64,000 nucleotides of DNA, taken from positions 124,001-188,000 of IMG/VR virus record IMGVR_UViG_3300008261_000001; one strand, written 5' to 3'. A program made the translations under genes and the position numbers. The notes under the pieces are model-generated. The model did no database searches, had not been told where the DNA came from, and saw only the letters and a program-made list of their open reading frames with translations. Shown here piece by piece: positions 4,448 to 43,748 of the stretch (its first letter is position 1; the number at the start of each line of letters is the position of its first letter).

Positions 4448-4544
4448 TAATGAGCTAGTTCCCCACTTGGGATAAAAATGAGAAAAAAATCTTTTTTTGA
4501 AAAACCTTTCCACTTTTTATCCCAAGTGGGGAACTAGCTCATTA
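4448..4544. promoter_or_regulatory. Perfect 31-bp inverted repeat made of two divergent TATCCCAA-N12-CTCATTA promoter-like elements
   Basis: 4448-4478 TAATGAGCTAGTTCCCCACTTGGGATAAAAA is the reverse complement of 4514-4544; faces genes 4401(-) and 4583(+). Confidence 0.8.
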
Positions 4545-4582
4545 ATGGGTGCGTACACACCCACACAGCTAAGGAGTCCCGC

Positions 4583-4822
4583 ATGGGCTACTACGAGCTT
4601 CAGCAGACCACCAACGACTTTGTCCTCGACACCGCCATGTCCCTCGACGATAAGCCCCTCACGGAAGCACAGCTCACCAAGCTCGTCAACACCTATATCC
4701 GCAAGGTTGCCCGTACTAAGGAGGGCAAGCTCGACCTCGCTGATGTCCTCGGGCTCAAGAAGGTGGAGAACATCCTCCCCTCCCTCGTCCGTCGGGTGAA
4801 GAACACTCAGAAGATCAAGTAA
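4583..4822 (+). CDS. Hypothetical protein (TATCCCAA-motif gene)
   Basis: 79 aa, AAGGAG RBS, C-ending codon bias. Confidence 0.75.
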   Translation: MGYYELQQTTNDFVLDTAMSLDDKPLTEAQLTKLVNTYIRKVARTKEGKLDLADVLGLKKVENILPSLVRRVKNTQKIK

Positions 4823-4840
4823 GACCCACCCCCACTCCGC

Positions 4841-7516
4841 TCACCCCTGACAGCTAAGGCACTCGTCTACTTCTTTAAGTGCCTTACGCTCGACCTTTTG
4901 GGAGACTTTATCTGCCACCACACCTGCTGAGGTACGGAGGTAATAGAGTCCCTTAAGTCCCTTCTTCCAAGCGGACAAGTGAACAGCGTTGACATAGTTC
5001 ACATCTGACCCTGCTGGAAAGAACAAGTTGACGCTCTGACCTTGACATATCCATTCTTGGCGGACAGAGGCGTGTTCGACTATCCACATTTGGTCTAGCT
5101 CGAACGCGGTCTTAAATACCTGCTTGTCGTGGTCGGTTAAGAAATCCAAGTGCTGTACGCTCCCTTGTTTAAGGATAACAGATTGGATAGTTTCATTGAG
5201 CCAACCATCGGGATTCTCTTGGGATAAGCTGTGAGTTTTTAGTTTATCCAATAGGTATTTATTCACCTGTAGGAAAGAACCTGCCCTAGTTCTATGGGTA
5301 AAGGCGTTGGACTTCCACGGCTCAATAGAGGGTGAAGTATCCAAAATGATGGCGGAGTTAGCGTTGGGGGCGATGGCGAGGAGGTGCGAGTTCCTCATGC
5401 CTGTGCCGATGCCGTCTAGGTACTCACCTTTAAGCTGTGCTAGACGCTGAGAAGAAGCGACCGACTTATCTTTTATGTGGTTAAAGATTTTCCTATTGGC
5501 GATGGTAGCCCAGAGGGACTCGAAGGCGATGTTTTTCTTTTGTAGATAGGAGTGGAAGCCCATAGTGCCGAGTCCAAGCGACCGCTCGTGTTTAGCCGAG
5601 TAAATAGCTTTGGATAACTTAGCGGGTGCATGGTCTATGAAGTACTGAAGCACATCGTCTAGGAACTCAACCAAGTCCTCAACGATGGTGGTGTTTTCCC
5701 ACTCGTCAAAGTACTCTAAGTTTAGGCTGGAGAGACAACAGACAGCGGAGCGGTCTTTGGCTGTGGGAAGATGGATCTCGTTGCAGTTTCCTGTGAGAAC
5801 CCCATTGAAAACACCCATATGTCGTAGGGGCTCGTTAAAACAATAGGTGTCTGCATAACCGTTTTCAGTCACACTCTCGATCTTGACGAAGCGAGAGGCA
5901 GAGCGGGAGGGTGTATGTTGTTCGATGGTGAGTCGGTGTGTCTTCAGTCCAAGATTGAGGAGCTTTTGTGTGTCTACGGAGTTAATAAGGATACGCCACG
6001 CTTCACGACACCTATAAACGCCTCCGCCTCTGACTCCGAAGTCGATGTTCCTCTCGCCTGCGAAGTGGGAAATCTTCGGTTGTACACCAAGAGTGTTGAG
6101 CATGAGGCTCAAGTCGGTCAAGAAACCCCTATTTGTGGACACTAGCTGTAGTGACTGATTTTTACCATTTCTTGACACACAACCGTCAGCGTCTAAGAGA
6201 CCAGAGAGCCAATCCATTCTCGTCTTGAGAGATAGGTTCAAAGGCACCTGAAACTTGGGCTTAATGTCTGATTTTGGATATTTCACAACGAGTCGGTTTT
6301 GATCCTCGTTTCTGTAAACCTTAGCCTGTGGGGTAATCAACTTATCCAATAAGGAGGTCTTTGCTCCATAAAGATAAGTGATGGGTTGCTTCACTTGGTT
6401 GTATGTCCCGTCTCCTGTGAAAAATCCGCAAGCATAAGCATTTTCCCAATAGCCTTGTCCATCGACTGTAGGTAAATCAAACTTCAGTAGCTTGAGTCCG
6501 CTCTTGAGGTCTTTTGCTTCAAGGACTCTCTCATTTTCGTCATAAAACTTGTGATAAGGGGTTGTATTAAGGGTGACTCCATTAGTGAGTTTCACCTCCA
6601 AAATCTGTTGGTTTTCACCCGTCTTTAAGATCCGAGTTTGAGACCAAGTCTTTCCATTCCAAACCTCCACCTCACGCCCCACTAGAGACTCAATCGGAAA
6701 GTATCCATTTTTCGTTAAGATTTGTGTGTCGCCTCTAACGCACAGATTAGAGCCGTGTATTTCTAACCCTTTGTCTTTGAGGGCTTGGGGTAAATGGCGA
6801 TTAGCCGTATCTATGAAGTTCAAGTAAGGCTCACCTGTACGAAACCTTACCTCTAAGATTCTCTGCCAAAGGCTACGGGCATCTAGGGTGTCCCTCACCT
6901 CTTTGCTCTTAGGGTCGATCAAGTCCCATGTGCCTCCCTTGAACACCGCCTCCATGAACTTATCCGTGATGTTGATGGCGTTGTTGAGGGTGAAGCACTT
7001 TCTGTTCGTATCTCCACCTGTGGGGACACGGATATTTAAGAACTCTACGATGTCGGGGTGGGACACCTCCAAATAAGCCGCATACGAGCCTTTACGGGTT
7101 GAACCTTGCTTATAAGCACCCATGTCGGCATCGACCGTCTTTAGAAAGGGAATGGGTCCAGGGGCTTTATTGGATACCGAGCGTATATTTGACCAATGTC
7201 CACCTACACCACCACCCAAGACGCTCATCCACCGCAGTTCTTCGGAGTGAGAAATCAACCCCTCGATGGTGTCGTCCACATAGGTGAGAAAACAAGAGAT
7301 GGGCATCCCTTGTCCCTCAGCGTTGGATAAGATGGGTGAGGAGAACATGAACCAACCTTTAGAGGCGTAGTCGAATATCCTCTGAGCTAGTTCTTTGTTG
7401 GGCGTGTACGCATAAGCGGCTCTCTTAAAAGCGTCTAGGGGAGAGCTGTCTTCTCCCTTTAGGTAGTAGCTCTCTAATAAAGACTTGGCGTGGTCTGAAA
7501 AATGGAAACTATCCAT
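4841..7516 (-). CDS. nrdA: Ribonucleotide reductase class Ia alpha subunit (no ATP cone), intein-containing
   Basis: FSSPILSN, PISCF, GGGVG, GEPY, GSNL/CNEI, VCCLSSLNL, AIAPNANS, QGQSVNL, KGLYYLR, C-terminal CLSCQG. Confidence 0.96.
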   Translation of the reverse strand: MDSFHFSDHAKSLLESYYLKGEDSSPLDAFKRAAYAYTPNKELAQRIFDYASKGWFMFSSPILSNAEGQGMPISCFLTYVDDTIEGLISHSEELRWMSVLGGGVGGHWSNIRSVSNKAPGPIPFLKTVDADMGAYKQGSTRKGSYAAYLEVSHPDIVEFLNIRVPTGGDTNRKCFTLNNAINITDKFMEAVFKGGTWDLIDPKSKEVRDTLDARSLWQRILEVRFRTGEPYLNFIDTANRHLPQALKDKGLEIHGSNLCVRGDTQILTKNGYFPIESLVGREVEVWNGKTWSQTRILKTGENQQILEVKLTNGVTLNTTPYHKFYDENERVLEAKDLKSGLKLLKFDLPTVDGQGYWENAYACGFFTGDGTYNQVKQPITYLYGAKTSLLDKLITPQAKVYRNEDQNRLVVKYPKSDIKPKFQVPLNLSLKTRMDWLSGLLDADGCVSRNGKNQSLQLVSTNRGFLTDLSLMLNTLGVQPKISHFAGERNIDFGVRGGGVYRCREAWRILINSVDTQKLLNLGLKTHRLTIEQHTPSRSASRFVKIESVTENGYADTYCFNEPLRHMGVFNGVLTGNCNEIHLPTAKDRSAVCCLSSLNLEYFDEWENTTIVEDLVEFLDDVLQYFIDHAPAKLSKAIYSAKHERSLGLGTMGFHSYLQKKNIAFESLWATIANRKIFNHIKDKSVASSQRLAQLKGEYLDGIGTGMRNSHLLAIAPNANSAIILDTSPSIEPWKSNAFTHRTRAGSFLQVNKYLLDKLKTHSLSQENPDGWLNETIQSVILKQGSVQHLDFLTDHDKQVFKTAFELDQMWIVEHASVRQEWICQGQSVNLFFPAGSDVNYVNAVHLSAWKKGLKGLYYLRTSAGVVADKVSQKVERKALKEVDECLSCQG
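5786..6742 (-). mobile_element. Intein with LAGLIDADG endonuclease (319 aa) at the catalytic SNL/C site of NrdA
   Basis: Begins CVRGDTQILT, has TTPYHKF, GFFTGDG and LSGLLDADG, ends DTYCFNEP..GVLTGN followed by C+1. Confidence 0.92.
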
Positions 7517-7649
7517 TTTTTATTTCTCCGTAGTTTTTAAGTTAATGGGAGTCGTACCCTATGCGGGCAGGACTCCCATCTATTATAGTGTTGACTGAAC
7601 AGCTTGTGGTTTATTCAACCCTTCGCTGTGGAACGATAGTAGTGCTTAT

Positions 7650-8594
7650 CTAAACACTAAAAACTTTCACGACTCCTACCTTAAACTTTACCCACGGATC
7701 CCTAGCACCCATACGCACCGCATCCTCACATTCATAAAGATGTCTCAGTAGCTTTCTTATCCTCAACACACCTAAGGCTTTGACTTTAGGGATGAGCATA
7801 TTCTCCACAAACCACGGATTCTTACCTGTGTCTTCTGCGATCCTCTGTGGTGTGTGTTTCGCCTCTAAACGCAAACCTATATCTATCCATTGCACGAGGT
7901 TGTACAACAATAATCCGTTACACACAGCCATCGTTTGGTCTGTAGATGTTGTGTTCTCTATCTTCTGACAGAGTTTTAGAAACTCCACCATATTTCCACT
8001 CGCCACAGAATCCACCAACTCGGCTCCATGTATTTCGGATAGTTCTGAAATACAACCCTTCACTATAGGGGCGGTTATCTCTTTAGTACCTTGCTTATGT
8101 GGCACACAAGCCATGTACTTTTTAAGCTCCCACCTCAAAACACCCAAATCCGTACCCACTCGCTTCACTATGGCATCGGCTAAGTTAGCCTTAAGCTCAT
8201 AACCCTCAGATTTGACGAAATCTAAAACAAAGTCCACCGCCCATTTCCGCTTCTCATTGTCGTACTTGGGCTCGTCTAGCTTTAAAGACGGATAAGTCTC
8301 TAAAGCCTTTGGAAGCCTATCGTTACGCTGAACCACCAACATCTCAACACCTGTTAAGCTCTCCAACACATTGGATAGTTTCTTCAACTTGGTGGGGTTA
8401 TTTAAAACTACAAATAAGGGATCCGTATCGAACAAGCTCGATTCACAAGACGCTAAGACCTCTTGCTCGTTAAGGTCTTTGCAGTCAACTTCACGCACCT
8501 CAAACCCTTTTGCCCTTTGTTCCTCTAAGATTGAGGCTAACCTCAGATTTATCCAATCTTCTGACGACCCATAGATGGTTCTAATCACCTGCAT
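7650..8594 (-). CDS. holA: DNA polymerase III delta (clamp loader)-like protein
   Basis: IYGSSEDWI, SLFD..FVVL, AIVKRVGTDLGVLRWELKK, KNPWFV, LYECEDAVRMG match the delta-subunit layout. Confidence 0.7.
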   Translation of the reverse strand: MQVIRTIYGSSEDWINLRLASILEEQRAKGFEVREVDCKDLNEQEVLASCESSLFDTDPLFVVLNNPTKLKKLSNVLESLTGVEMLVVQRNDRLPKALETYPSLKLDEPKYDNEKRKWAVDFVLDFVKSEGYELKANLADAIVKRVGTDLGVLRWELKKYMACVPHKQGTKEITAPIVKGCISELSEIHGAELVDSVASGNMVEFLKLCQKIENTTSTDQTMAVCNGLLLYNLVQWIDIGLRLEAKHTPQRIAEDTGKNPWFVENMLIPKVKALGVLRIRKLLRHLYECEDAVRMGARDPWVKFKVGVVKVFSV

Positions 8595-8627
8595 TTGCCC
8601 CTTTGGGTTGTGGGTTAAGATTCACTC

Positions 8628-8669
8628 TCATTATAGGCTACTAGGGCTTCATTATAGGCTACTAGGGCT
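8628..8669. repeat. 21-bp tandem duplication containing TATAAT on the minus strand
   Basis: TCATTATAGGCTACTAGGGCT twice, just upstream of the holA-like gene. Confidence 0.85.
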
Positions 8670-9299: not shown

Positions 9300-10960
9300 T
9301 TATCCCTGTGACGCTGTAAGGCGACGCTACCACAACCCCCATTATAAGCATTTAAAGGGGGTCTCCTAAGGGTTTTAACCCCTACCCCCTAGTGGGACAC
9401 AAAAAACTTGTGAAGACCCTTAGGGATGTCGTATAAGGGAGGTTGTTCACTCCATAGGCTTTAGAGCTTATAGAGGCGTAGCCAAGTCACGAGTGGCTAG
9501 ACTTCTTTGAAACCTACCAAACTCGACAACCTAGAGGGGGTGGATACCCTTTAGGTTTGACTAGGCTATGGGTAACACCCACTAAGAGGGATCTGTCGTT
9601 TACGATACGCTCTTAGCGAACTCACCCCATAATCTAACCTGTTCATACGCTGAGGCTTAAGGGTCTATCCAATAGAGAAGAAGGTTCTCTATCTACGATG
9701 ACCAAACAGCCCTAGAGAGATGGATGGCTCCAATCACTTCCGTTGGAGGTTCTGTCTAGTACCTCGTCTTTAAGGTTATCCTTAGGACTCGTACTAAACT
9801 CCTTCTAGTCTCCTACTCCGTATCTCTCTCTTATCCACCACTAGAGAACAACACCTAGAAATATTGTTCTTCTCTAGCTGTCCTTCAGTATCCAATCCTC
9901 TAGGTGTTAGATACTGAGTCCTCTTATCCTCTCTACTACTAGATATCTCTCTCTTAGTACTACTAGTAAGACATCTACTACTAGTAAGACATCTACTACT
10001 GAATAGGATAAGAACTTACTAACTACTAAGTAGTAAGTATTATCCCTCTCTTTGAACTAAGAGAGGGGATAGTGGATATAGGACATGAGAGGATACGAAG
10101 TATCGTCTAAGGACTATAGCCAATAACTAATAACCAACCTACTCCACCTACTACTACTCAACTACCAACTACTCTCACTCAACCTCTAACTACTCAACAA
10201 CCTCTAACTACAACTCCTACAACTACTACTAATACTCAACTAACTCCTACTGCTCAACTAACTATAACTCCTACTGCTCAACTAACTACACCTACTACTA
10301 CAACTACCCTTATGACTCCTTCTAATCCTACTGCTCTTACAACTCCTAATCCTACTGCTCCTACTACTACTAATATAACCAATACACCTACTATGAATCC
10401 TACTCCTACTACCCTTATGACCTCTACTACTGCTGCTCCTACTCGTAATATGGATACTTCTCTTAGTACTTCTAATCCTACAGCTAGATCTCTTATAGCT
10501 CCTACTACTGCTCCTACTACTGCTCTTACTCCTACTACTAGAGTATCTCTAACTGAGTAGAGTTATCCAATATCTCTTAAAATAGATAAGGTGTTGGTTG
10601 AAGTCCAACACCTACTAGAAATAAGAAATATCATCATCCTCTATCCGTAATGGATAGATAGAACTTATCAGTTCAGTAAGAGAGAGAAGGGAAGATAGTA
10701 GATAGAGAGATAGAACTTATCAGTAAAGATAAGATGGAAAGAGATAGAACTTACTAGAGGATAGAGAGAGAGGGATAGATAGAGAGAGGGATAGATAGAG
10801 AGAGGGATAGAGAACTTATCAGTAAGGAGAGTAAATAGTCACCTTACGGAGATAAATGGATAGTCACCTTACTGAGATAAATGGAAAGAATGGGTTTAGG
10901 TTAGAGCTTATAGGTCTTGGGGAGTGAGTTAATCTTATAAGGGTTGGTTGAGAAGAAAGG
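9300..10960. other. Long non-coding repeat-rich region, probable replication origin
   Basis: Gene orientation and C/G skew flip here; many hairpins; tandem repeats (18 bp ~9958-10000, 25 bp ~10835-10884, AGAACTTATCAGT x3, AGAGAGGGATAGA x3). Confidence 0.6.
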
Positions 10961-13926: not shown

Positions 13927-13953
13927 TATCCCAAGCTCTGATTCGGCTCATTA
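13927..13953 (+). promoter_or_regulatory. TATCCCAA-N12-CTCATTA promoter-like motif
   Basis: Exact motif 45 bp upstream of the 13999 ATG. Confidence 0.75.
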
Positions 13954-13998: not shown

Positions 13999-14898
13999 AT
14001 GATCGTTATCCTCAGCCCCAACGCCCAGCTCGCCTCACAAACCATCGACCTCCCCACCCCTCCCGTTGTGACCATCGAGGCGGAGTACGGCTCATATGTG
14101 GCTCAGGGTTCTATCTACACCGCCGCTCACCATCAGCCCGTGGGTTCTGAGTTCGCAGGTCGTCATATCGGTGGGTCACGCCCTGCCCCTTGCAACGACA
14201 GCAAGATTCCCGTTGTTGGGGATAACGATGTGGTTCTTATCAGCCACATTGACGCAGACACGCTTGGTGGGCTCATGAGGGCGAGTGGGCAGTACGCCCC
14301 TCTTTTCAACCTTGAGGGGTTTTGGGAGTTTGTGGAGTTTGTGGACACTCATGGTTGGCACAAGGCTGACCCCACACACCCGCATTTCACGCACCTCTCC
14401 GCTATCGGTGCATACCTTCAGTCTAATCGCCCCAATACGCCTCGTGACACGAACTCTGATGTGACGGAGTTCGTGGTGGGTGCAATGGAGTTTGTCTCTC
14501 GACTCCTTAAGGGAGGGCTTGAGGAGCTTCAAGTCGGTGTTAAGTTCGTTAAGGCTCAGGACGACTTGAACTTGTCCTCGTGGGTCACTACCACCCCCTT
14601 CAATGTCGTTGTCCGTAGGGCTACGACCTTCACCAATCACCTCTATCGTGACCCTAACGGCATGGTGGGTGTGGGCATCGTGGCTTACAATGACTCCCTC
14701 GGCTCTATCACTATTTCTCTCGCAGACCCTATCAAGGGGGTCTCTTGTCGTGAGGTGGTGCAGTCTCTTTGGGGTCAGCAAGCAGGTGGGCATGATGGCA
14801 TCGCTGGCAGTCCTCGTGGTCAGATTATGACCGAGTTGGACTTTAAGAACGCCATTAACGCCTTCTCACAGGCTGTAGCCTACGCTCTGAACGCTTAA
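13999..14898 (+). CDS. Putative DHH/DHHA1-like phosphoesterase
   Basis: TAAHH, ISHIDAD, FVDTHG, AGGHDGIAGSPRG; AAGGA RBS; fold call is inference. Confidence 0.5.
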   Translation: MIVILSPNAQLASQTIDLPTPPVVTIEAEYGSYVAQGSIYTAAHHQPVGSEFAGRHIGGSRPAPCNDSKIPVVGDNDVVLISHIDADTLGGLMRASGQYAPLFNLEGFWEFVEFVDTHGWHKADPTHPHFTHLSAIGAYLQSNRPNTPRDTNSDVTEFVVGAMEFVSRLLKGGLEELQVGVKFVKAQDDLNLSSWVTTTPFNVVVRRATTFTNHLYRDPNGMVGVGIVAYNDSLGSITISLADPIKGVSCREVVQSLWGQQAGGHDGIAGSPRGQIMTELDFKNAINAFSQAVAYALNA

Positions 14899-15580: not shown

Positions 15581-16045
15581 ATGGCGAACGACAAGTGGAA
15601 AGCAGGACCTGAGGTACAGGATAAGATTAACGAGTTGGTGGGCAATCATCATCCACATCTTGCCGACATCGTGTACGACATTGTGGTTATTTTTAAGGAT
15701 AAAGCCTCACGCAAGGGTGGTTATCCAGTTTTGGGTAAGACTTCTAAGGCACCTGCGATTTTGAGCGTTTTGGGTGAGCGTCAGTATCAGTTTGTTATCG
15801 AGATTGGAAACGATGTGTGGCAGAAGCTGTCTGTAGAGCAACAGCTTGCTTTGCTCGACCATTTGTTGTCGTTTATTCGTGGGGAGGAGGACGAGCAGAC
15901 GGCAGAGATGAAGTACAGCTTGGCGGAGCCTGATATTTATTACTTCACCGAGGAGGTTGCTCGTCACGGATACTGGCGTCCTGACCTTTCGGATAAGGAA
16001 GAGGAGGCTGAGGGCGAGGGGTTGTTAGACCCCCTTGACGATTGA
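15581..16045 (+). CDS. Phage metallopeptidase-like protein with degenerate HExxH
   Basis: HHPHL, VLGKTSK, FVIEI..DVW, LALLDHLLSFI, PDI..F.EEVARHGYW. Confidence 0.65.
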   Translation: MANDKWKAGPEVQDKINELVGNHHPHLADIVYDIVVIFKDKASRKGGYPVLGKTSKAPAILSVLGERQYQFVIEIGNDVWQKLSVEQQLALLDHLLSFIRGEEDEQTAEMKYSLAEPDIYYFTEEVARHGYWRPDLSDKEEEAEGEGLLDPLDD

Positions 16046-17524: not shown

Positions 17525-18130
17525 ATGTCTATTGCACCTTCAGCGGAAAAGGTGGCGAAGCAGTATTTATCCAAAACTGCATCTGAACCTAAGGGTAAGG
17601 GTATTGGAAAGACAGCGGGTGAGGTTAGGTTCATTAAAGACCACGGAGACGACTCGTCTGCGTGGGCGTGGGGGCAACACCCACCTAGTCAGAGAACAAT
17701 GGATAAAAACCATCAGTTCAATAAGAGGTGTAGTAAGGACATGGCTAGAGTTCTGAGGGCGACTTTATCCGCACTTGGTCATGCCATGAGTGCCTACAGT
17801 GTGTTTGCTAAGATTAAGAGCCGAGACATAAGTCCCGATGGGAACTTGGGTGGTCGAGGCTACATAATGGAAATCAAGGGTATGCGTAGGCAATACATGA
17901 ACATCGTGGAGGCTCTCTCCGCCTTATCCGATACGCTGTATGACGAAATGACAGCGGATCATTGGAAAGAGGTACAGGAGAAGATGGTTCAGAAGGTCAT
18001 GCAAGATATTGAGGAAATAAAGGATGACCCAGAGGGTTGGGCTATTCAAGAAGAGACTGAGACCGATGAAGAGGGGTTGCGTAGAGATTTAACCTCGCCT
18101 AGAGACGATGAGGAGATGCCAAATGAGTAA
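17525..18130 (+). CDS. Hypothetical protein, probable virion head component
   Basis: AAGGAG RBS; KVA/KTA motifs near N-terminus; first gene of the plus-strand head block. Confidence 0.7.
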   Translation: MSIAPSAEKVAKQYLSKTASEPKGKGIGKTAGEVRFIKDHGDDSSAWAWGQHPPSQRTMDKNHQFNKRCSKDMARVLRATLSALGHAMSAYSVFAKIKSRDISPDGNLGGRGYIMEIKGMRRQYMNIVEALSALSDTLYDEMTADHWKEVQEKMVQKVMQDIEEIKDDPEGWAIQEETETDEEGLRRDLTSPRDDEEMPNE

Positions 18131-23819: not shown

Positions 23820-24071
23820 ATGACCGAGCCCATTTATCCAAAGAGTCGTAAGAGGGCGGACTACAGGGTGATAGCGAGGATCTTGGAGTTAAGCCACGGT
23901 CAGAACCACCCAAGTGATGACTTGCTAGAGGAGATTTCCATTTTCTACAAGAGCAAGGGGGGGACTTGGGTAAAGTTTTTTGAGGGTAATCCGGATCATA
24001 ATAAGTTATTAAAAGCAGCGATCTCGTTTATAATGAAGCAAAAGAAGGAGCTGTATGATAGACGACAATGA
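23820..24071 (+). CDS. Hypothetical protein
   Basis: 83 aa, GGGAG RBS, between terL and portal. Confidence 0.65.
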   Translation: MTEPIYPKSRKRADYRVIARILELSHGQNHPSDDLLEEISIFYKSKGGTWVKFFEGNPDHNKLLKAAISFIMKQKKELYDRRQ

Positions 24072-25740: not shown

Positions 25741-25902
25741 TAGATTATTTATACTCCAAGATAGCGGATAGGTTAACCCTTAACCCAACCCCTGTCTTGG
25801 AGTAATCAAGATGAGAACAGCATCGGAAGTATTAAGAAGCCTTGAGGCTCGTATCGCTCGTTTAGAGGGTCGCACAGCTTCTTCAAAGAGAAGTGCAAGC
25901 CT
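25725..25902 (+). repeat. Direct repeat copy 1 (portal 3' end + promoter + UTR hairpin + leader codons)
   Basis: Near-identical to 26380-26557. Confidence 0.92.
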
Positions 25903-26379: not shown

Positions 26380-26557
26380 TGGCGGTCGGTTCTAATAGAT
26401 TATTTATACTCCAAGATAGCGGATAGGTTAACCCTTAACCCAACCCCTGTCTTGGAGTAATCAAGATGAGAACAGCATCAGAAGTCTTAAGAAGCCTTGA
26501 AGCTCGTATTGCCCGTTTAGAGGGTCGCACAGCTTCTTCAAAGAGAAGTGCAAGCCT
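26380..26557 (+). repeat. Direct repeat copy 2
   Basis: Near-identical to 25725-25902. Confidence 0.92.
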
Positions 26558-34530: not shown

Positions 34531-35409
34531 ATGAGCAATACCGTAGATAATGCAGTCAAGCAGAAGATCATTAGCGACTACATCAAGACCCCTCAAGGTC
34601 GTGCTAAGTTAGCCGCTTCGATGACTCAGCCTTTGCGTCTCCGCAGAGACTACACCTCTGTCGGTCGCAAGACTTTCCTTGTTGAGCAGTTGCCCGATGG
34701 TGCTCTGCCCATCTATGACAAGGATCCCGATGTGACCGCGTTCGTGGTTGGTGAAGAGGGTCAGAACATCCTCGCTATCACCAAGCCCCGCCGTGTGATC
34801 TTCCCCTTGTTCGAGATTGCCTCGAACCCTGAGATCCCCTTAACTCAGATTAAGGAGAGGCGTTTCGACCTCATCGAAAGGGCTCAGGATCTCGCAAGGG
34901 CTCAGATCCAAGCCGCTGAGGATGAGCGTGTATTCGCTATCCTTGACGCTGTGGCAACACAGGGCTTCGACAGCCTCCCTGGTCAGACCAACGCTGACAT
35001 CCCTGTCATCGCTCCCCTCAATGGTGCGGTGCTTGCGGATGCGTTCTCGCTCATCGAGCGTCACGACCTTCGCGTAGCTCGCGTGTTCATGAACGCTCGT
35101 GACTATGCAGACATCAGAAAGTTCGGTCGTGACATCCTCGACATCGAGAGCCAAGCGGCACTCTTAAAGACAGGTCTACAGGCTACCCTTTGGGGCTCTC
35201 AGATCATCACCTCACGCCTCGTGCCTGTTGGTACGGTGTATGTGTGCTGTGAGCCTGAGATGTTCGGTCGTATCCCTGTTCGTACAGAGCTTACCGTTCT
35301 CTCAGCGGACGATCCTAAGGCTCGTACCATCGGCTTCTCCGTGTTCGAGAACCTCGGTATCGGTGCATACAACCCCCGTGGTCTTGCCCGTCTCACCGTG
35401 ACCCGCTAA
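34531..35409 (+). CDS. Major capsid protein (HK97 fold, encapsulin-like size)
   Basis: GRAKLAASMTQPLR, FEIASNPEI, IQAAEDERVF, VFMNARDYADIRK, ENLGIGAYNPRG; strong RBS; terminator follows. Confidence 0.85.
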   Translation: MSNTVDNAVKQKIISDYIKTPQGRAKLAASMTQPLRLRRDYTSVGRKTFLVEQLPDGALPIYDKDPDVTAFVVGEEGQNILAITKPRRVIFPLFEIASNPEIPLTQIKERRFDLIERAQDLARAQIQAAEDERVFAILDAVATQGFDSLPGQTNADIPVIAPLNGAVLADAFSLIERHDLRVARVFMNARDYADIRKFGRDILDIESQAALLKTGLQATLWGSQIITSRLVPVGTVYVCCEPEMFGRIPVRTELTVLSADDPKARTIGFSVFENLGIGAYNPRGLARLTVTR

Positions 35410-35524: not shown

Positions 35525-35592
35525 AATAGGTTATTTATACTCCGAGATAGGGGATAGGTTTTAACCCTTAACCCAACCCCTATCACGGAGTA
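35525..35592 (+). promoter_or_regulatory. AATA-N5-TTTAT promoter-like motif plus RBS-occluding hairpin (third copy of cassette UTR)
   Basis: Homologous to 25739-25804; TACTCCGAGATAGGGG pairs with CCCCTATCACGGAGTA. Confidence 0.75.
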
Positions 35593-36261
35593 ATGAAGAT
35601 GATAAGATCAGCCAGTCTATCGCAAGAAGATCAAAGAGTGATTCAACTCTTTACCTATAGAGAAAAAGGTCAATCCAAAAGCATGAACTCTACGGGGGAT
35701 CGTTTAGATGGACCAGGACCAGAACTAAAGGGGGTTGCATTTTGGGAAAACGACCAAATTTGGTTTGTGGAAAAGGGATCTAGAACAGGACAACAAATCC
35801 ACAAATTGATTAAAAAGTTGAACCCTTATCCAGAGGTTTTGGGTGGTTATAAAAAGGAAGCACCCATGTTGGTTATGAGAAGATCAGCAAGCGAAGTATT
35901 AAGAAGTCTAGAGCAGAGAGTCGCATCCCTTGAGGCACAAGCGGCTCGCCTTGTTCTGCCTAGCAGGGCTAGGATGAAGGGCAAGAGGGTCGGTAAGAAA
36001 GACTTATCCGATTTGCTTATGGAGTTTATCAGTTCTGAGTACATGAGCGGGGGAGACGAGTTCTCTAGCTTTAACTTAGATGGCGATAAGTTCTCATTTC
36101 AGATCATGACAGACGATGGGGACGAGACTTTTTGGGCGGGCAAAATCATCGACAGAGGTGTTGCTCAGTCCGCACTCCTTAGCCAAGACAGCTATGCCCT
36201 AGAGGACGCTGTGATGGTTAAGCGTGATAGAAACCGAGACAGCGGTTTCGGTTATCGCTGA
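35593..36261 (+). CDS. Two-module cargo protein with internal MRRSASEVL leader
   Basis: N-terminal MKMIRSAS; internal MRRSASEVLRSLEQRVASLE at 35875. Confidence 0.8.
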   Translation: MKMIRSASLSQEDQRVIQLFTYREKGQSKSMNSTGDRLDGPGPELKGVAFWENDQIWFVEKGSRTGQQIHKLIKKLNPYPEVLGGYKKEAPMLVMRRSASEVLRSLEQRVASLEAQAARLVLPSRARMKGKRVGKKDLSDLLMEFISSEYMSGGDEFSSFNLDGDKFSFQIMTDDGDETFWAGKIIDRGVAQSALLSQDSYALEDAVMVKRDRNRDSGFGYR

Positions 36262-38612: not shown

Positions 38613-38622
38613 GGGATTGGAA

Positions 38623-38949: not shown

Positions 38950-38961
38950 GGTTTCTTATCC

Positions 38962-39384: not shown

Positions 39385-39449
39385 TTTTAAGGGTTCTATG
39401 AGCCTATCACTATAGACACGCACCCCCTTCTTTGAGAGAGAGGTCACAC

Positions 39450-40100
39450 ATGAGAAATCTAATGTCACGCCCAACAGCTAGACGGGTCTATATGGACGAG
39501 AGTATTGAAGCTCTGTCTCCTAATATGAGTGACAGCAAGGATTATTATGGAGACCTTACAACTGCGGAAAACCACATTTACTTCTATCAAGAGGTGACCC
39601 CCAAGACCATCATGAAGCTTGGGCTTGCCATCAAGTCCATCGAACAACAGCTTATAAACCTCGCCACCAATCTGAGCTTATCCCAAGTCCCAGCTATCCA
39701 TTTACACATAAACTCAGGTGGTGGCTGTGCCTTTAGCGGTCTTGCAGGTGCAGGACATATCCTTAACTCTCAAATCCCCGTCTTCACCTATGTAGAGGGA
39801 AATGCCGCTTCAGCCGCCACGATCATGTCGTGTGTTGGTGCGAAGCGTTTCATCACCGAACATAGCTTCATGCTTATCCACCAAGTAAGTACAGACTTCT
39901 GGGGCACCTATGAAAATCTTAAAGATGAAAAAGAGTCGATGGATGCACTCATGGATATGGTGTCTAGCATCTACTTGAAGCACACAGGACTGAAAAAGAA
40001 ACAGCTCAAGGCGTTGCTCAAGCGGGACTTATTCCTTAACGCTGAGTCTTGCCTTGAGCTGGGTCTTGTCGATGAGGTTATGAACTTCGAGAGGGTCTAG
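39450..40100 (+). CDS. clpP: ClpP-like protease subunit
   Basis: LHINSGGG, GNAASAAT, MLIHQ, RDLFLNAESCLELGLVD. Confidence 0.88.
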   Translation: MRNLMSRPTARRVYMDESIEALSPNMSDSKDYYGDLTTAENHIYFYQEVTPKTIMKLGLAIKSIEQQLINLATNLSLSQVPAIHLHINSGGGCAFSGLAGAGHILNSQIPVFTYVEGNAASAATIMSCVGAKRFITEHSFMLIHQVSTDFWGTYENLKDEKESMDALMDMVSSIYLKHTGLKKKQLKALLKRDLFLNAESCLELGLVDEVMNFERV

Positions 40101-40115
40101 CCCTCTATCCCCCTC

Positions 40116-40631
40116 TTAGGGGAGGGTCTCCACCATCTCCCACGAGACCACAGGGATTGAGATCCACTCCGCGAAGTGGAGGTTCTGCTTCACCACATCC
40201 TTGAGGGCGGTGAGGTACTCCTTGTGCTTCTCCGCAGGGGGGTTGTTGGGGTCGAGAGGCTTCTTGCTGATGACAAGCCCCTTCACATAGTACTGCTTGG
40301 TCTTGTCGTTGATGTAGACCCCTTGAGCGATGAGGCGGAGGGGCTCTTCTTTCTTAGCCCTGGGGTTTCCGTTGGGGCTGATGGAGTCGGTGATGGAGGT
40401 GTAGATGCCCACACAGGGCTGGCCTCCACCGAAGATAGCCGCGTCCACCTCTTGGGGGGTGGCGTTCTCAAAGCCCTTCACAGAGCGGACGAGATTGGTG
40501 GCGGTGGTGAGGTCGAGGCGGCGGGTAAAGCTGTCGATCTTGTTGAAGTTCTGGATGAGGCAGTCGCGGTAGCTGACCTCAGGGTTGAAGATGTAGGTGT
40601 TGTTGTTGCTCTTGGCGATGATGTATGCCAT
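40116..40631 (-). CDS. Hypothetical protein, paralog of 43801-44397
   Basis: TATCCCAA motif upstream; GVYINDKTKQYYVKGLVI ~ GVVIHKTTGEIHIRGIIV. Confidence 0.75.
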   Translation of the reverse strand: MAYIIAKSNNNTYIFNPEVSYRDCLIQNFNKIDSFTRRLDLTTATNLVRSVKGFENATPQEVDAAIFGGGQPCVGIYTSITDSISPNGNPRAKKEEPLRLIAQGVYINDKTKQYYVKGLVISKKPLDPNNPPAEKHKEYLTALKDVVKQNLHFAEWISIPVVSWEMVETLP

Positions 40632-40690
40632 CTGTCGAAGCCCTTTCTCTAGGCGGTGTTTTTATCTGTCTCTGTCTGCTGTCCCCCTAC

Positions 40691-40717
40691 TAATAAGGGG
40701 GTGTGAGGTTTGGGATA
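40691..40717 (-). promoter_or_regulatory. TATCCCAA-N12-CTTATTA motif
   Basis: Exact motif upstream of the 40631 start. Confidence 0.75.
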
Positions 40718-40733
40718 ATCTTTTTCTCTATTT

Positions 40734-41117
40734 TTAGAAGTTCAGCTTCTGCCTCCAGACCCCATACGAGGTTGCCCCCGTGATGTCGTCAACGAAGCGG
40801 ATCTTGGTGAGGATGTACACCTCGCCTTTTGAGATACCCCTCTCAGGGTAGTCCTTACGGGCTCTGACCTCTTTCGAGGTACACTTAAAGTGGGTGTTGG
40901 TGTCTTGATCCCACACATAGTCGGAGAGGTATCTGTTCGGATCTCTCTCTACGATGCTCCCATAGGAGCGTGAGAAGTGGTACTCCGCATAAGTCCAGTA
41001 GTGGTTGTTTTCAACCTCAACCTCAACCGCTGTGGTCTTAGGAGTGGTGTTCACCGCCCAACCGATGATGGGCAGTACTTGGCTCTCAGCGGGAGTCTGA
41101 ATAGTGGTGTTCCACAT
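40734..41117 (-). CDS. Hypothetical protein
   Basis: ATG after AAGGA; motif at 41165-41191. Confidence 0.7.
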   Translation of the reverse strand: MWNTTIQTPAESQVLPIIGWAVNTTPKTTAVEVEVENNHYWTYAEYHFSRSYGSIVERDPNRYLSDYVWDQDTNTHFKCTSKEVRARKDYPERGISKGEVYILTKIRFVDDITGATSYGVWRQKLNF

Positions 41118-41164
41118 ATTGTGTGTTTCCTTATCGTTGGTGTAGTCTATCGCTTGCACCTCTA

Positions 41165-41191
41165 TAATGAGGTGCTTTGAGCTTTGGGATA
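41165..41191 (-). promoter_or_regulatory. TATCCCAA-N12-CTCATTA motif
   Basis: Exact motif. Confidence 0.75.
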
Positions 41192-41196
41192 AAGAA

Positions 41197-41736
41197 ATGC
41201 CGATTTACACAGAGAAAAATGATGTGGGTCAGAGAGTCCCTTGTCCAAGAACGGAGACATACATCACTTGGGCTTGGGTCGGCAGAAATATGAAGGGTTG
41301 TGTGCGTGTAGATTTCTCTACTTTGGTGTGCGAGTTCTTAGCCGAGATCGGCTTCTCACCGCCCCACATAGCTGACTTTCAGAATTCTTATCGTGAACTC
41401 AGACGAGCGAGTTTTAGTTTCCCTTCCGATTATCCATTTACGCTACAGCTTACATGGGACATACGGGGTAGGGTCTTATCCACAAGGACTTATCCAATAG
41501 ACGAAGAAGACGAGTTTTATGAAGCTCTGAGTCCTTACTTACCGCAGGTGCGTTGTGCCTTATGGAAAAATAACAATAAGGGTGTGTGCCACTATGGAAC
41601 CTATACACACCACCTTCAAGATTGGGAGTACGACCCCAAGAGCGTTGGAGATCTGTTAGATTTCTTGTTGAGTTTTATACGGAGTGGTTACGGAATAACA
41701 CACACCCTTATCCCAAACCCTAAAGCTCTTTATTAA
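41197..41736 (+). CDS. Paralog family member 1 (IRSxY end)
   Basis: QVRCAL...LLDFLLSFIRSGY; start uncertain. Confidence 0.65.
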   Translation: MPIYTEKNDVGQRVPCPRTETYITWAWVGRNMKGCVRVDFSTLVCEFLAEIGFSPPHIADFQNSYRELRRASFSFPSDYPFTLQLTWDIRGRVLSTRTYPIDEEDEFYEALSPYLPQVRCALWKNNNKGVCHYGTYTHHLQDWEYDPKSVGDLLDFLLSFIRSGYGITHTLIPNPKALY

Positions 41737-41793
41737 GAACCACACGCCAAACACAGACGGATTAAAAAATCTTGCTCGGCAAGGAGATAAATT

Positions 41794-42294
41794 ATGTGCT
41801 ACACCGAAATCGTAACTGGAAAGAGGTTTTTCACCTATGACAGTCTCCCCCTCACCGACTTGGGGGACATCACCCCATATTTGATGGGGGCTATGGAGGA
41901 GATGGGTTTCACCTATCTAATGGATAGGTTTTCAACCGACAAAACCTCTGGGGCGAGTGTTTTTGTCCTAGAGTTTAAGAGGGACGCTATGGTGGTGAAG
42001 GTGTGGTACTCGGTCGATGGGGTTAAAGACCTCACTTGGACAGATTGTGAGCCTGAGGATTGTGTACTCAACGAGTTTTCCAAAAGCACAAAACAACAAC
42101 ACATTAGGCAATCTGTTTACTTCGAAGACTCTATACGCCCTCTCGATTACACCTATTCCATAGACCTTAGAAGGTCTAGCTACCTAGAAGACTTCGAGGG
42201 GACTTTTACAGCAGATGAGGTAATGAACCCCATCATCGAAAATATCCGTAGAGCTTATTTCCAATCTATCCCAAACTCCCGAACCCCTTATTAG
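41794..42294 (+). CDS. Paralog family member 2
   Basis: HIRQSV...IIENIRRAY; AAGGAG RBS; motif at 41709-41735. Confidence 0.75.
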   Translation: MCYTEIVTGKRFFTYDSLPLTDLGDITPYLMGAMEEMGFTYLMDRFSTDKTSGASVFVLEFKRDAMVVKVWYSVDGVKDLTWTDCEPEDCVLNEFSKSTKQQHIRQSVYFEDSIRPLDYTYSIDLRRSSYLEDFEGTFTADEVMNPIIENIRRAYFQSIPNSRTPY

Positions 42295-42334
42295 TGGGAG
42301 CAGAATGCACTACCCAATAAACAGGAGTAACATC

Positions 42335-42838
42335 ATGCAGTTCACCCACATTGTAAATGGTAAGAGAGTCGCCACCCCCTCCCAGACGGGTCGTTTGACA
42401 GATCTAAATTTAACTTATTCCGTGGGGGAGTACATCCAGAGCAACTTCACATGGAATATGGTCGATAGCCTCAACGAAGCTAAAATAACCTATATTAATA
42501 GATTTGAGGTCGAGGGGGTGAAGATGTACTGCTATGAGAGAGAGGACTGCGGTCTCGAACTAAAGGTGTGGTGGGGTGTACCTACTAATAGCGACTTGAT
42601 AGACCTCAATGGGACAGACACTTACGGTGAGGACGAACACTTCACACCAACCGACACACCTTCTCACATGAGAGCTTGTGTAAAAGTAGAAGGTAAAGCC
42701 CACTATTACAGCTTGACCCTAGATCAGATGCCCCTTCCAAACTGGAAGACTAGATGGCCTTTGAAGGTTGCTGTGGAGTGGGAGACCATCTTGAACTTTA
42801 TTCTGAGCAGTATCCGAAGCTCCTTCCCTACCCCTTAG
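42335..42838 (+). CDS. Paralog family member 3
   Basis: HMRACV...ILNFILSSIRSSF; AGGAG RBS; motif at 42267-42293. Confidence 0.75.
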   Translation: MQFTHIVNGKRVATPSQTGRLTDLNLTYSVGEYIQSNFTWNMVDSLNEAKITYINRFEVEGVKMYCYEREDCGLELKVWWGVPTNSDLIDLNGTDTYGEDEHFTPTDTPSHMRACVKVEGKAHYYSLTLDQMPLPNWKTRWPLKVAVEWETILNFILSSIRSSFPTP

Positions 42839-43376
42839 GATGGGATTTAATGTAGTCTTCGTAGGAGCTACGGATAGATAAGAGGATATAGCTAACAATA
42901 TGTCCTAGTGATGTGGCGTAGCTCCAAGCCCTCCCCGCTGTCGGTACGCTGAAACCAAATGGATAAGTCTCGGAGGGGTAGCCAACACACACCCTAAGGT
43001 GATGTGGGTGCTGATGGCCCACTTGGTTTAGTTTCTTATCCTCTGGAAACACATCTACACTATCGAGAGATGTCACCTTTCCATTTTCATCTGGCGTAGC
43101 CCACCATGCCGAGAACTTGATTTGAGGTGTGCAATCTAAACGCTCGAAGTCTATCCTTTCGATTTTTAATCCAGCTCTAGGTGCGTTGTACAAGTCGTGT
43201 TTTTCGACCAGCACAAAACCTGCTTCTTTCATAACCTCTTCAAGTACGCTACTGAAATGAAGCGGGTTAGCGAACTTAGAACTAGTCGTATGGACTTCGT
43301 CTAGGTTTGTCATGGTATTTTTGGAAAACTCCGTTGGAGTTCTCTTTGACTGTTTGATTTCTGTCCATCTATCCAT
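42828..43376 (-). CDS. Paralog family member 4 (convergent)
   Basis: HLRVCV...IVSYILLSIRSSY. Confidence 0.75.
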   Translation of the reverse strand: MDRWTEIKQSKRTPTEFSKNTMTNLDEVHTTSSKFANPLHFSSVLEEVMKEAGFVLVEKHDLYNAPRAGLKIERIDFERLDCTPQIKFSAWWATPDENGKVTSLDSVDVFPEDKKLNQVGHQHPHHLRVCVGYPSETYPFGFSVPTAGRAWSYATSLGHIVSYILLSIRSSYEDYIKSHPKG

Positions 43377-43461
43377 ATGGTTATCCCCCTTCTTGAGTGC
43401 CTACAGCAAAACCCTATAGGGTTTTATAGGGAAGGGGGTTGTGGATCTCGTCGTGTGGGTA

Positions 43462-43632
43462 TTAAAGACCCTTTCTGAGCGGCCACTTCCCTGCTCGGAC
43501 ATCCATTTCACGGAGTAGATGAAACAGAGCCTCTTGCTCCTGCTGAGTCATTTTGGAGATGCCTTGCTCCAAAAGAGTCCTGTTGTGGCGATACTTGTGT
43601 GTGATGGGGAGGATGTACCGAAGCCAACTCAT
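43462..43632 (-). CDS. Small hypothetical protein (56 aa, MSWLRYILP...)
   Basis: Own translation; AGGAG RBS; motif at 43673-43700. Confidence 0.65.
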   Translation of the reverse strand: MSWLRYILPITHKYRHNRTLLEQGISKMTQQEQEALFHLLREMDVRAGKWPLRKGL

Positions 43633-43672
43633 ACTTCTTGCTCCTAGCGATTGGTGGGTTGTGCCCCTCCCC

Positions 43673-43748
43673 TAATGAGAGTGGACTCCGCTTTGGGATA
43701 AAAAATCTTTTTACTCGTTTTTATCCCAACCCTTAGTGACCCTTATTA
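43673..43748. promoter_or_regulatory. Second divergent pair of TATCCCAA-N12/13-YTYATTA motifs
   Basis: 43673-43700 (-) and 43722-43748 (+). Confidence 0.75.

What the first reader, a model, noticed from the sequence alone, without database searches (positions are those of the whole stretch)
4448..43748. Non-sigma70 bipartite motif TATCCCAA-N12-YTYATTA marks a candidate early regulon
Nine copies: 4448(-), 4518(+), 13927(+), 40691(-), 41165(-), 41709(+), 42267(+), 43673(-, N13), 43722(+). Each lies about 40-60 bp before an accessory gene, twice as back-to-back divergent pairs. Fixed spacing with a variable spacer suggests a promoter for a phage or alternative host sigma factor/RNA polymerase. 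The downstream genes (including the AcrIII-1-like and DHH-like ones) form a shortlist of host-takeover or anti-defence candidates.
Basis: partly seen in the sequence, partly recalled or inferred. Interest (0 to 1): 0.6.

Follow-up and report, generated by a model that had tools for sequence, protein, structure and literature searches.

The report
Phage sigma-type promoter for accessory genes
A 27-base two-box motif repeated about 32 times in a 290-kb freshwater jumbo phage is most likely that phage's own promoter class, read by host RNA polymerase carrying a phage-encoded ECF-like sigma factor, and it mainly switches on small genes of unknown function.

Summary
All nine copies are at the stated places: eight with N12 (0.03 expected by chance) and one with N13. 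The whole 290,179-bp virus record holds 22 strict and about 32 profile-level copies. Every copy points at a start codon 6-87 nt downstream (median 44.5).

The full element is an A/T-rich tract, TTATCCCAA, 12 nt, CTTATTAG, a G-run, and then a leader with only 8.9% T. Its geometry (TATCCC, 16 bp, TATTAG) fits a sigma-70-family promoter, but its letters do not match the canonical one.

No phage RNA polymerase, MotA or AsiA was detected. A core 203-aa gene outside the window is an ECF-like sigma factor. Nine sampled relatives keep a bipartite (in G012 near-contiguous) upstream motif with lineage-specific letters. The boxes drift stepwise as the sigma diverges (82%, 77%, 69%, then about 50% identity).

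Best explanation: a phage-sigma-dependent early or delayed-early promoter class, analogous to SPO1 gp28. This is a new member of a known kind.

"Early" timing and the transcription start are untested, because no RNA data exist. The "AcrIII-1-like" and "DHH-like" labels got no Pfam or PHROG support. The ten proteins behind the nine window copies match no family.

The parts
4448..4474 (-). Promoter copy 1: TATCCCAA-GTGGGGAACTAG-CTCATTA. It forms a divergent pair with copy 2.
   Evidence: Exact match; PWM score 54.
4000..4401 (-). First gene behind copy 1 (133 aa, no family). It heads a minus-strand run that reaches a UvrD-type helicase lying partly left of the window.
   Evidence: Start codon 46 nt after ATTA. 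No Pfam or PHROG hit. UvrD domain in the 1123-aa ORF.
4518..4544 (+). Promoter copy 2, with the same spacer and box 2 as copy 1.
4583..4822 (+). Gene behind copy 2 (79 aa, no family).
   Evidence: Start codon 38 nt after ATTA.
13927..13953 (+). Promoter copy 3.
13999..14898 (+). Gene behind copy 3 (299 aa, no family). It is followed by a 178-aa ORF and a 154-aa phage metallopeptidase (15581-16045).
   Evidence: Start codon 45 nt after ATTA. PF18894 E 7e-20 for 15581-16045.
40691..40717 (-). Promoter copy 4.
40116..40631 (-). Gene behind copy 4 (171 aa, no family).
   Evidence: Start codon 59 nt after ATTA.
41165..41191 (-). Promoter copy 5 (box 2 is CTCATTAT).
40734..41117 (-). Gene behind copy 5 (127 aa, no family).
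   Evidence: Start codon 47 nt after ATTA.
41709..41735 (+). Promoter copy 6. It lies in the last codons of ORF 41197-41736.
41794..42294 (+). Gene behind copy 6 (166 aa, no family).
   Evidence: Start codon 58 nt after ATTA.
42267..42293 (+). Promoter copy 7. It lies in the last codons of gene 41794-42294.
42335..42838 (+). Gene behind copy 7 (167 aa, no family).
   Evidence: Start codon 41 nt after ATTA.
43673..43700 (-). Promoter copy 8, the N13 variant. It forms a divergent pair with copy 9.
   Evidence: Sequence context; PWM score 31.
42828..43632 (-). Two genes behind copy 8: 43462-43632 (56 aa) and 42828-43376 (182 aa). Neither has a family.
   Evidence: Start codon 41 nt after ATTA.
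43722..43748 (+). Promoter copy 9. Its leader shares 32 identical bases with the copy at genome position 49627.
43801..44397 (+). First gene behind copy 9 (198 aa, no family). It heads a long plus-strand run.
   Evidence: Start codon 52 nt after ATTA.

Best explanation
The motif is the core of a phage-specific promoter class with about 32 copies in the 290-kb genome, nine of them in the window. The consensus is an A/T-rich upstream tract, TTATCCCAA, 12 variable nt, CTTATTAG, a G-run, and then a T-poor leader ending in AGGAG and ATG. Read as hexamers, it is TATCCC, 16 bp, TATTAG, which is the geometry of a sigma-70-family -35/-10 promoter with non-canonical letters. Most likely the host core RNA polymerase is redirected to these sites by the phage's own 203-aa ECF-like sigma factor. 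That gene lies at genome 270,799-271,410, outside the window. In this model its sigma-4 domain reads the TATCCC(AA) box and its sigma-2 domain reads TATTAG. Transcription would start 1-10 nt after ATTA, within or just past the G-run. The sigma gene itself sits behind a host-type TTGACT-N16/17 element. The inferred cascade is therefore: a few host-sigma-70 promoters (immediate-early, including the sigma gene), then the TATCCCAA class (delayed-early, mostly small lineage-specific genes), then a separate TTTATA class (replication and structural genes). Shown: the motif, its statistics, orientation and geometry, the sigma fold, the lack of detectable phage polymerase, and lineage-specific motifs in relatives. 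Inferred: which protein reads the motif, the start site, and the timing.
For: (1) Statistics and placement: 8 copies against 0.03 expected. Genome-wide there are 22 strict copies and 0 in the control. All of about 32 profile copies are co-oriented with a start codon 6-87 nt downstream.
(2) Extended anatomy: position -28 to -20 is TTATCCCAA, -7 to +1 is CTTATTAG, and +3 to +6 is a G-run. The upstream 30 nt are 68% A+T. The leader is 8.9% T against 26.5% in the genome.
(3) It is not the canonical host type. The -35 letters differ, and the hexamer's last base is G in 81% of copies where TATAAT has its final T. Sigma-70-like sites in 39.5-45.5 kb number 1 against 6.4+/-2.4 expected. TTGACA occurs only 38 times on both strands of the genome.
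(4) The 203-aa protein is a sigma factor. JGI names its homologs 'sigma24 family'. A family profile hits PDB 3mzy sigma-H at E 3e-5 across regions 2-4. The AlphaFold2 model has pLDDT 81. The 50 listed Foldseek PDB hits are almost all sigma factors or sigma-RNA polymerase models, led by an RPSH-RPOB integrative model, Mycobacterium tuberculosis SigH and E. coli SigE.
(5) No T7-like or multisubunit RNA polymerase domains, and no AsiA or MotA, were found. The giant ORFs give no polymerase signal.
(6) Comparative evidence: there are 0 exact copies in 21 relatives. Each of nine sampled lineages has its own bipartite (in G012 near-contiguous) motif. Four orthologous core genes carry the lineage's own motif in five genomes.
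(7) The sigma is a core gene with a nearly invariant sigma-2 and a variable sigma-4 helix.
(8) Graded drift. At 82% sigma identity the motif is CATCCCAA-N12-TnTATTAG. At 77% it is TATCCCAA-N12-nnTATTA(G/A). At 69% it is TTTCCCA(A/C)-N12-(T/C)G(T/C)ATTAG. At about 50% it is CCCCC...(G/T)ATAAG.
(9) Published context: jumbo phages without their own polymerase encode sigma factors to recruit the host enzyme (PMC7824862). SPO1 switches from host sigma-A to phage sigmas (PMC13401047).
Against: There is no transcript data. No public RNA run holds this phage, so the start site, strand and timing are untested. The link between this sigma and this motif is correlative. Close relatives share everything, so co-divergence is confounded by phylogeny. 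No pair of lineages isolates a single sigma change with a single box change. G017 has a sigma homolog but a very different motif, and G007 (73% complete) shows no sigma homolog. A second sigma-4-like core protein (189 aa) and several HTH proteins exist. Pfam would miss a very divergent polymerase, and the PF00940 control rang in no genome. If these really are the first genes expressed, a sigma that must first be synthesised is awkward unless it is packaged in the virion. The host is unknown.
Confidence: 0.6

Rival explanations
1. Sigma appropriation. The host primary sigma reads the -10-like TATTAG, while a phage DNA-binding activator sits on TATCCCAA at about -30. The activator could be the 189-aa sigma-4-like protein or one of the HTH_23 proteins. 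This would work like MotA/AsiA at T4 middle promoters.
For: The box lies at a fixed distance from a TA-rich -10-like element. Several HTH proteins lie inside the regulon: 427, 277 and 132 aa. The core 189-aa protein has sigma-region-4-like domains; Pfam Sigma70_r4 scores 31 bits, and the fold matches -35-binding domains with TM 0.7-0.8. A TTGACA-N16-TATAAG promoter at genome 55270 also ends in G, so the host enzyme may tolerate that -10 variant.
Against: No MotA or AsiA homologs were found. The hexamer's last base, which is T in canonical TATAAT, is G in 81% of copies. The HTHs of the 189-aa protein are almost invariant across lineages whose boxes differ, so it cannot set box specificity. The HTH_23 proteins are not core genes, whereas the promoter class occurs across the clade.
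Confidence: 0.15
2. The promoters serve an unrecognised phage-encoded RNA polymerase, possibly delivered with the virion. This would make them true host-independent early promoters, as in N4, crAss-like or phiKZ-type phages.
For: The motifs carry very high information and are lineage-specific, which is typical of phage polymerase promoters. G012's version is almost contiguous over about 24 nt. The targets are small accessory genes of the kind usually expressed first. Several giant core ORFs (2898, 2658, 2451 aa) have no assigned function.
Against: Pfam T7-type and beta/beta' domains are absent. The conserved centre of the 2898-aa ORF has no DxDGD-type motif, and its only weak look-alikes are viral structural or tail-type clusters. 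There is no PDB sequence hit. The variable 12-nt spacer and -35/-10 geometry suit a sigma factor better. An N4-like hairpin is not supported: mean stem 3.5 against 3.24+/-0.14 in re-paired controls, P about 0.05.
Confidence: 0.07
3. The motif is read by a host factor alone, either the host's primary sigma with an unusual consensus or a host alternative sigma.
For: The geometry is that of a sigma-70-family promoter. The host is unknown, so its consensus cannot be checked.
Against: Relatives of similar G+C and habitat (G001, G002, G012, G017, at 45-47.5% G+C) use different boxes, and none of 21 relatives has a single exact copy. A host consensus would not drift stepwise with a phage gene. The phage's own sigma gene keeps a canonical TTGAC(A/T) element in four lineages, which suggests the hosts use the ordinary consensus.
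Confidence: 0.05

Closest known systems
Bacillus phage SPO1 middle promoters read by gp28, a phage sigma with host core polymerase
   Same: A phage without its own polymerase encodes a small sigma. That sigma redirects host core polymerase to a bipartite, non-host consensus, after a first phase driven by host sigma (PMC13401047 abstract). The SPO1 consensus letters I give are from memory.
   Different: The box sequences differ (SPO1 AGGAGA / TTTnTTT, from memory). There is no detectable sequence kinship to gp28. Here the targets are mainly small lineage-specific genes. The sigma-promoter link has not been tested experimentally.
Bacterial ECF (group 4) sigma factors and their promoters, such as SigE, SigH and SigW
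   Same: The 203-aa protein has the two-domain sigma-2/sigma-4 architecture, and its best structural matches are ECF sigmas. The promoters are bipartite, of high information content, and have fixed spacing.
   Different: The boxes lack the usual ECF 'AAC' -35 and 'CGT' -10 cores (from memory). The protein has an extra N-terminal segment of about 60 residues. No anti-sigma partner was identified. The gene is encoded by a virus and is a core gene of the clade.
T4 early and middle promoters, and the promoter cassettes of T4-type hyperplastic regions (PeSL; from memory, Arbiol et al. 2010)
   Same: Many near-identical strong promoters, often divergent, each drive one or two small ORFs that differ between related phages. 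Some promoter-leader cassettes are duplicated at distant loci, with 32- and 27-nt identical leaders.
   Different: T4 early promoters are host sigma-70 promoters, and T4 middle promoters need MotA/AsiA, which are absent here. An associated stem-loop was not examined.
Jumbo-phage promoters of phiKZ/AR9-type multisubunit polymerases
   Same: They are jumbo phage genomes with short, conserved, phage-specific early motifs.
   Different: No beta/beta' homologs were found here. The clade fits the 'no polymerase but sigma factors' type described by Iyer et al. 2021 (PMC7824862).

Membership tests
Sigma-70-family (ECF-like) promoter served by a phage-encoded sigma | Two conserved boxes at fixed spacing, with -35/-10 geometry | tested here: met
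   TATCCC, 16 bp, TATTAG in 30 of about 32 copies, with two N13 variants.
Sigma-70-family (ECF-like) promoter served by a phage-encoded sigma | Sites lie upstream of genes and are co-oriented with them | tested here: met
   All of about 32 copies have a start codon 6-87 nt downstream on the same strand.
Sigma-70-family (ECF-like) promoter served by a phage-encoded sigma | The phage encodes a protein with sigma-2 and sigma-4 domains | tested here: met
   The 203-aa protein at genome 270,799-271,410: profile hit to sigma-H 3mzy at E 3e-5, pLDDT 81, and nearly all of the listed fold hits are sigma factors.
Sigma-70-family (ECF-like) promoter served by a phage-encoded sigma | Sigma and promoter boxes change together among relatives | tested here: inconclusive
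   Boxes drift stepwise at 82, 77, 69 and about 50% sigma identity. G003 and G004 have near-identical sigma-4 regions and near-identical motifs. This is confounded by overall relatedness.
Sigma-70-family (ECF-like) promoter served by a phage-encoded sigma | Transcription starts 5-9 nt after the -10 box and depends on that sigma | not testable with these tools
   No RNA run holds the phage.
Canonical host sigma-70 promoter (TTGACA-17-TATAAT) | A -35 hexamer close to TTGACA and a final T in the -10 hexamer | tested here: not met
   The -35 is TATCCC, and the last base of the -10 hexamer is G in 81% of copies. The consensus scan finds 1 site against 6.4 expected in 39.5-45.5 kb.
T7-type single-subunit polymerase promoter | A phage T7-like polymerase gene and a contiguous conserved promoter of about 20 bp | tested here: inconclusive
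   PF00940 gives no hit, but its control rang in no genome. The 12-nt spacer is variable, unlike T7-type promoters.
N4-type hairpin promoter with a giant virion polymerase | A copy-specific hairpin at the promoter | tested here: not met
   The longest stems are barely above re-paired controls: 3.5 against 3.24+/-0.14, P about 0.05.
T4 middle promoter (MotA box) | MotA and AsiA genes present | tested here: not met
   PF09158 and PF09010 give no hit at E<=1.
phiKZ/AR9-type multisubunit phage polymerase promoters | Split beta/beta' genes in the phage | tested here: not met
   PF00623 and PF00562 give no hit at E<=10, while their controls ring in 14 of 14 genomes. Very divergent homologs cannot be excluded.
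   No hit anywhere in the genome at E<=1. The regulon proteins have no Pfam or PHROG family. Folds were not tested.

The most novel reading that the evidence does not exclude
The TATCCCAA class is transcribed from the first minute by machinery brought in with the DNA, independent of host sigma. That machinery would be either an unrecognised polymerase hidden in one of the giant core ORFs or the ECF-like sigma packaged in the virion. This huge-phage clade would then carry a fast-evolving private transcription system that works across hosts ranging from 31 to 64% G+C.
Probability: 0.08. Interest if true: 0.85.

Novelty: new member of a known kind. Interest (0 to 1): 0.5.

Why it matters
The motif gives a sequence-only way to read the transcription programme of an uncultivated jumbo phage. 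That phage, or near-identical ones, appears in freshwater metagenomes from 16 studies. The motif delimits about 32 transcription units and flags the small, lineage-specific genes that the phage drives with its own promoter class. These make a reasonable shortlist for host-takeover or counter-defence functions, although none has a recognisable family yet.

Across the clade, one conserved ECF-like sigma goes with clearly different high-information promoters in each lineage. If the pairing holds experimentally, this is a natural series of potentially orthogonal sigma-promoter pairs. It would also be a clean system for studying how sigma specificity evolves.

The T-depleted leaders and the scarcity of TTGACA in the genome are further testable features of how this phage shapes its expression signals.

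Tried and rejected
- A megablast of the region against GenBank phages found nothing.
- Using the 375-aa core protein to fetch the orthologous divergent promoter region from many relatives failed: 0 loci with the single protein and 6 with an alignment. A broad covariation test was therefore not possible.
- TerL in 185,579 species genomes gave no relative, so there is no host clue.
- No RNA run holds the phage. Laying contigs of four DNA runs on window 40001-45000 (5,000 letters, within the operators' limit) listed no variant inside the six promoter cores. However, 117 differences were not shown, so this is weak evidence. Contigs break at the promoter repeats.
- The hairpin (N4-like) idea was rejected.
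- The giant 2898-aa ORF was considered as a polymerase and got no support.
- MotA and AsiA are absent.
- AcrIII-1 and DHH domains are absent at the Pfam level.
- The 189-aa sigma-4-like protein was rejected as the specificity factor, because its HTHs are invariant across lineages with different boxes.
- The 'moraphage' paper (PMC12619734) describes another lineage and was not used.

Full report
**What the window is.** The window is bases 124,001-188,000 of a 290,179-bp IMG/VR virus record (93% complete, 47% G+C). It encodes:
- terminase (21910-23766), portal (24055-25740), major head protein (34531-35409) and a sheath-like protein (52940-57757);
- ribonucleotide reductase and helicases;
- six tRNAs.

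The nearest GenBank record is the unannotated 485-kb 'uncultured phage' LR745208.1, with TerL 64% identical. IMG/VR holds many related huge phages. Near-identical DNA occurs in freshwater, lake and drinking-water metagenomes from 16 studies, but in no RNA run.

**Observation.**
- All eight N12 copies are exact at the stated coordinates, against 0.03 expected. The N13 copy at 43673-43700(-) is also real.
- Genome-wide there are 22 strict copies and none for the backwards-read control.
- A profile built from the copies finds about 32 sites, after which scores fall from 20 to 12.
- Every site points at a start codon 6-87 nt downstream (median 44.5) that is preceded by AGGAG.
- Copies cluster at genome 24-60 kb, in the window at 4.4, 13.9 and 40.7-43.7 kb, and at genome 267.8, 272.1 and 278.5 kb.

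**Anatomy.**
- Upstream of the first box lies an A-tract followed by a T-tract; these 30 nt are 68% A+T.
- The first box is TTATCCCAA, with each position at 88-100%.
- The 12-nt spacer is biased rather than conserved. It starts G/C then C/T, has an A-rich middle, and has a C-rich 3' end.
- The second box is CTTATTAG. ATTA is invariant and the following G is at 81%.
- Next comes a G-run at +3 to +6.
- The leader has 8.9% T, against 26.5% in the genome.
- Read as hexamers, the element is TATCCC, 16 bp, TATTAG. This is the same geometry as the rare canonical-looking TTGACA-N16-TATAAG promoter at genome 55270.
- A copy-specific hairpin across the second box is not supported.

**Other promoter classes.**
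- A second motif, TTTATA, lies in 51 of 201 oriented upstream regions, against about 5 expected. It precedes the DNA polymerase, the clamp-loader operon and the head and tail genes.
- Canonical sigma-70-like sites are very scarce. TTGACA occurs 38 times on both strands. A strict TTGAC[AT]-N16-18-TAnn[AT]T pattern occurs once. The consensus scan of 39.5-45.5 kb finds 1 site against 6.4+/-2.4 in shuffles.

**Who reads the motif.**
- Pfam models for T7-type and multisubunit polymerases find nothing. The T7 model's control rang nowhere, so that particular negative is weak.
- The giant ORFs give no polymerase signal. MotA and AsiA are absent.
- A 203-aa ORF at genome 270,799-271,410 scores weakly for Sigma70_r2. 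Its 45 homologs include several that JGI names 'sigma24 family'.
- A profile of the family matches the sigma-H structure 3mzy across regions 2-4, at E 3e-5.
- The AlphaFold2 model has pLDDT 81. The 50 listed Foldseek PDB matches are almost all sigma factors, mostly ECF type.
- A second core protein of 189 aa has sigma-region-4-like domains only. It lies in an operon with a clamp loader and a KOW protein, behind a TTTATA motif.

**Comparative evidence.** None of 21 relatives (TerL 42-79% identical) has a single exact copy. I assembled eight relatives from fetched stretches and called genes crudely. Each has its own high-information upstream motif:

| Relative | G+C | Motif | Copies in the print-out (regex on upstream regions) |
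|---|---|---|---|
| G001 | 47% | nTCCCCCC-N12-(C/T)ATATAAG | 11 |
| G006 | 38% | CCCCC-N10-TTGATAAG | 17 |
| G005 | 64% | GGACCCCCC-N8-CCGGTTAGGG | 8 (one doubtful) |
| G003 | 31% | GTTGCAAAG-N13-AAGTGTTA | 41 |
| G004 | 32% | ACTTGCAAT-N14-AAGTGTT | 24 |
| G012 | 45% | GTAACCCCTTATCTATnnnCTAGT | 14 |
| G017 | 47.5% | GGTATTGGTGAG-N9-TTGGG | 7 |
| G002 | 46% | TCCTTGT-N11-AATAGAGA | 6 |

- Four orthologous core genes (genome 56,630-61,041) carry the lineage's own motif in all five genomes compared.
- The 203-aa sigma is one of 94 core genes. Its sigma-2 part is almost invariant, and its sigma-4 recognition helix varies. The HTHs of the 189-aa protein do not vary.
- Contigs carrying closer sigma homologs show graded drift:

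| Sigma identity to G000 | Motif |
|---|---|
| 82% | CATCCCAA-N12-T(A/C)TATTAG, at positions orthologous to G000 |
| 77% | TATCCCAA-N12-nnTATTA(G/A) |
| 69% | TTTCCCA(A/C)-N12-(T/C)G(T/C)ATTAG |

- The sigma gene's own upstream region keeps TTGAC(A/T)-N16/17 in G000, G001 and the 77% and 69% lineages.

These facts point to a phage-encoded, co-evolving recognition factor, and the sigma is the only core candidate found. They do not prove it, because co-divergence is confounded by relatedness.

**The regulon.**
- The ten proteins behind the nine window copies have no Pfam or PHROG family.
- Genome-wide, 17 of 32 first genes lack a homolog in eight relatives, against 88 of 293 other genes (odds ratio 2.6, p=0.015).
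- The class also drives core genes: an AAA_5-like ATPase cluster, a UvrD-helicase operon, and a cluster that looks like DNA base modification.
- DUF1874 (AcrIII-1) and DHH domains are absent from the whole genome at the Pfam level.

**Timing.** By elimination, this class looks 'early'. Replication and structural genes use TTTATA, and host-type promoters are almost absent. However, a sigma that must first be synthesised implies a delayed-early class, fired after a handful of host-type promoters that include the sigma gene's own. This is inference.

**Verdict.** The motif is a real promoter class of strikingly high information content. It fits the known kind 'phage sigma redirects host polymerase': SPO1 gp28 (PMC13401047) and the sigma-bearing jumbo phages of Iyer et al. 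(PMC7824862). Its consensus is new, and it comes from an uncultivated clade whose lineages each have their own version.

**Confidence:**
- promoter class of the phage's own: about 0.9;
- read by the 203-aa sigma with host core polymerase: about 0.6.

Noticed in passing
window upstream of genes starting at 17525, 23820, 25811, 26466, 33904, 35599, 37215, 37779, 48006 (+) and of the minus-strand genes 58409-59047, 59625-60497, 62911-63384; about 50 sites genome-wide: A second, separate upstream motif, (G/A)TTTATA, has no -35-like partner. It lies 30-60 nt before structural genes, the DNA polymerase and the clamp-loader operon. It is probably the middle/late promoter class, and it also occurs in relatives G001 and G006.
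   Followed up: partly
window about 25741-25810, 26396-26465 and 35530-35598; also genome 21.5 kb, 22.0 kb, 224.9 kb and 278.5 kb: A near-identical leader of about 55 nt follows TTTATA: CTCCGAGATAGGGGATAGGTT..AACCCTTAACCCAACCCCTATCTCGGAGTAAT. It would form a long hairpin whose 3' arm contains the Shine-Dalgarno GGAG, so it may be a translational control element of highly expressed late genes.
   Followed up: no
G000 109,661-112,246 (outside the window; locus L024:1661-4246): An operon of a clamp loader (408 aa, DNA_pol3_delta2), a KOW/NusG-like protein (171 aa), a sigma-region-4-like protein (189 aa, core gene with invariant HTHs) and an 85-aa ORF. It is reminiscent of T4's clamp-coupled late transcription. 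It is followed by an 1838-aa SNF2-helicase protein.
   Followed up: partly
whole genome G000: The hexamer TTGACA occurs only 38 times on both strands of 290 kb, against roughly 140 expected from length alone. This may be avoidance of host -35 elements.
   Followed up: no
G000 272,127-278,124 (outside the window), behind the motif copy at 272,064: A cluster whose orthologs on contig L354 carry weak thymidylate-synthase, asparagine-synthase-like, PLP-enzyme and N6/N4-methyltransferase Pfam hits. It may be a DNA base hypermodification pathway driven by the TATCCCAA class. A thymidine kinase gene lies next to the sigma gene.
   Followed up: no
window 43750-43800 and genome 49,655-49,708; window 4402-4447 and genome 58,888-58,931: Promoter-leader cassettes are duplicated between distant loci, with 32- and 27-nt identical leaders. 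Metagenome contigs break at these repeats.
   Followed up: partly
window 62137-62163 (-): A hybrid-looking element, ATTGTCAA-N12-CATATAAG-GTGGG, lies before a 52-aa ORF in the tRNA region. It has the same layout as the motif, but with a sigma-70-like TTGTCA in place of TATCCC.
   Followed up: no
window 59147-62881: A cluster of six tRNA genes: Glu-TTC, Arg-TCT, Tyr-GTA, Gly-TCC, Val-TAC and Asn-GTT.
   Followed up: no
window about 10000-10311 and 7595-7650; genome 37.5 kb, 47.9 kb and 103.0 kb: Many intergenic leaders contain short tandem repeats of 15-20 nt, for example CCCTAGTAGCCTATAATGA twice before gene 7650-8594(-). Their function is unknown.
   Followed up: no
window 4841-7516 (-) and relatives: Gene sizes differ greatly between orthologs. 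The RNR large subunit is 891 aa here and 572 aa in G003. TerL is 618 aa here and 1040 aa in G006. This suggests inteins or other insertions.
   Followed up: no
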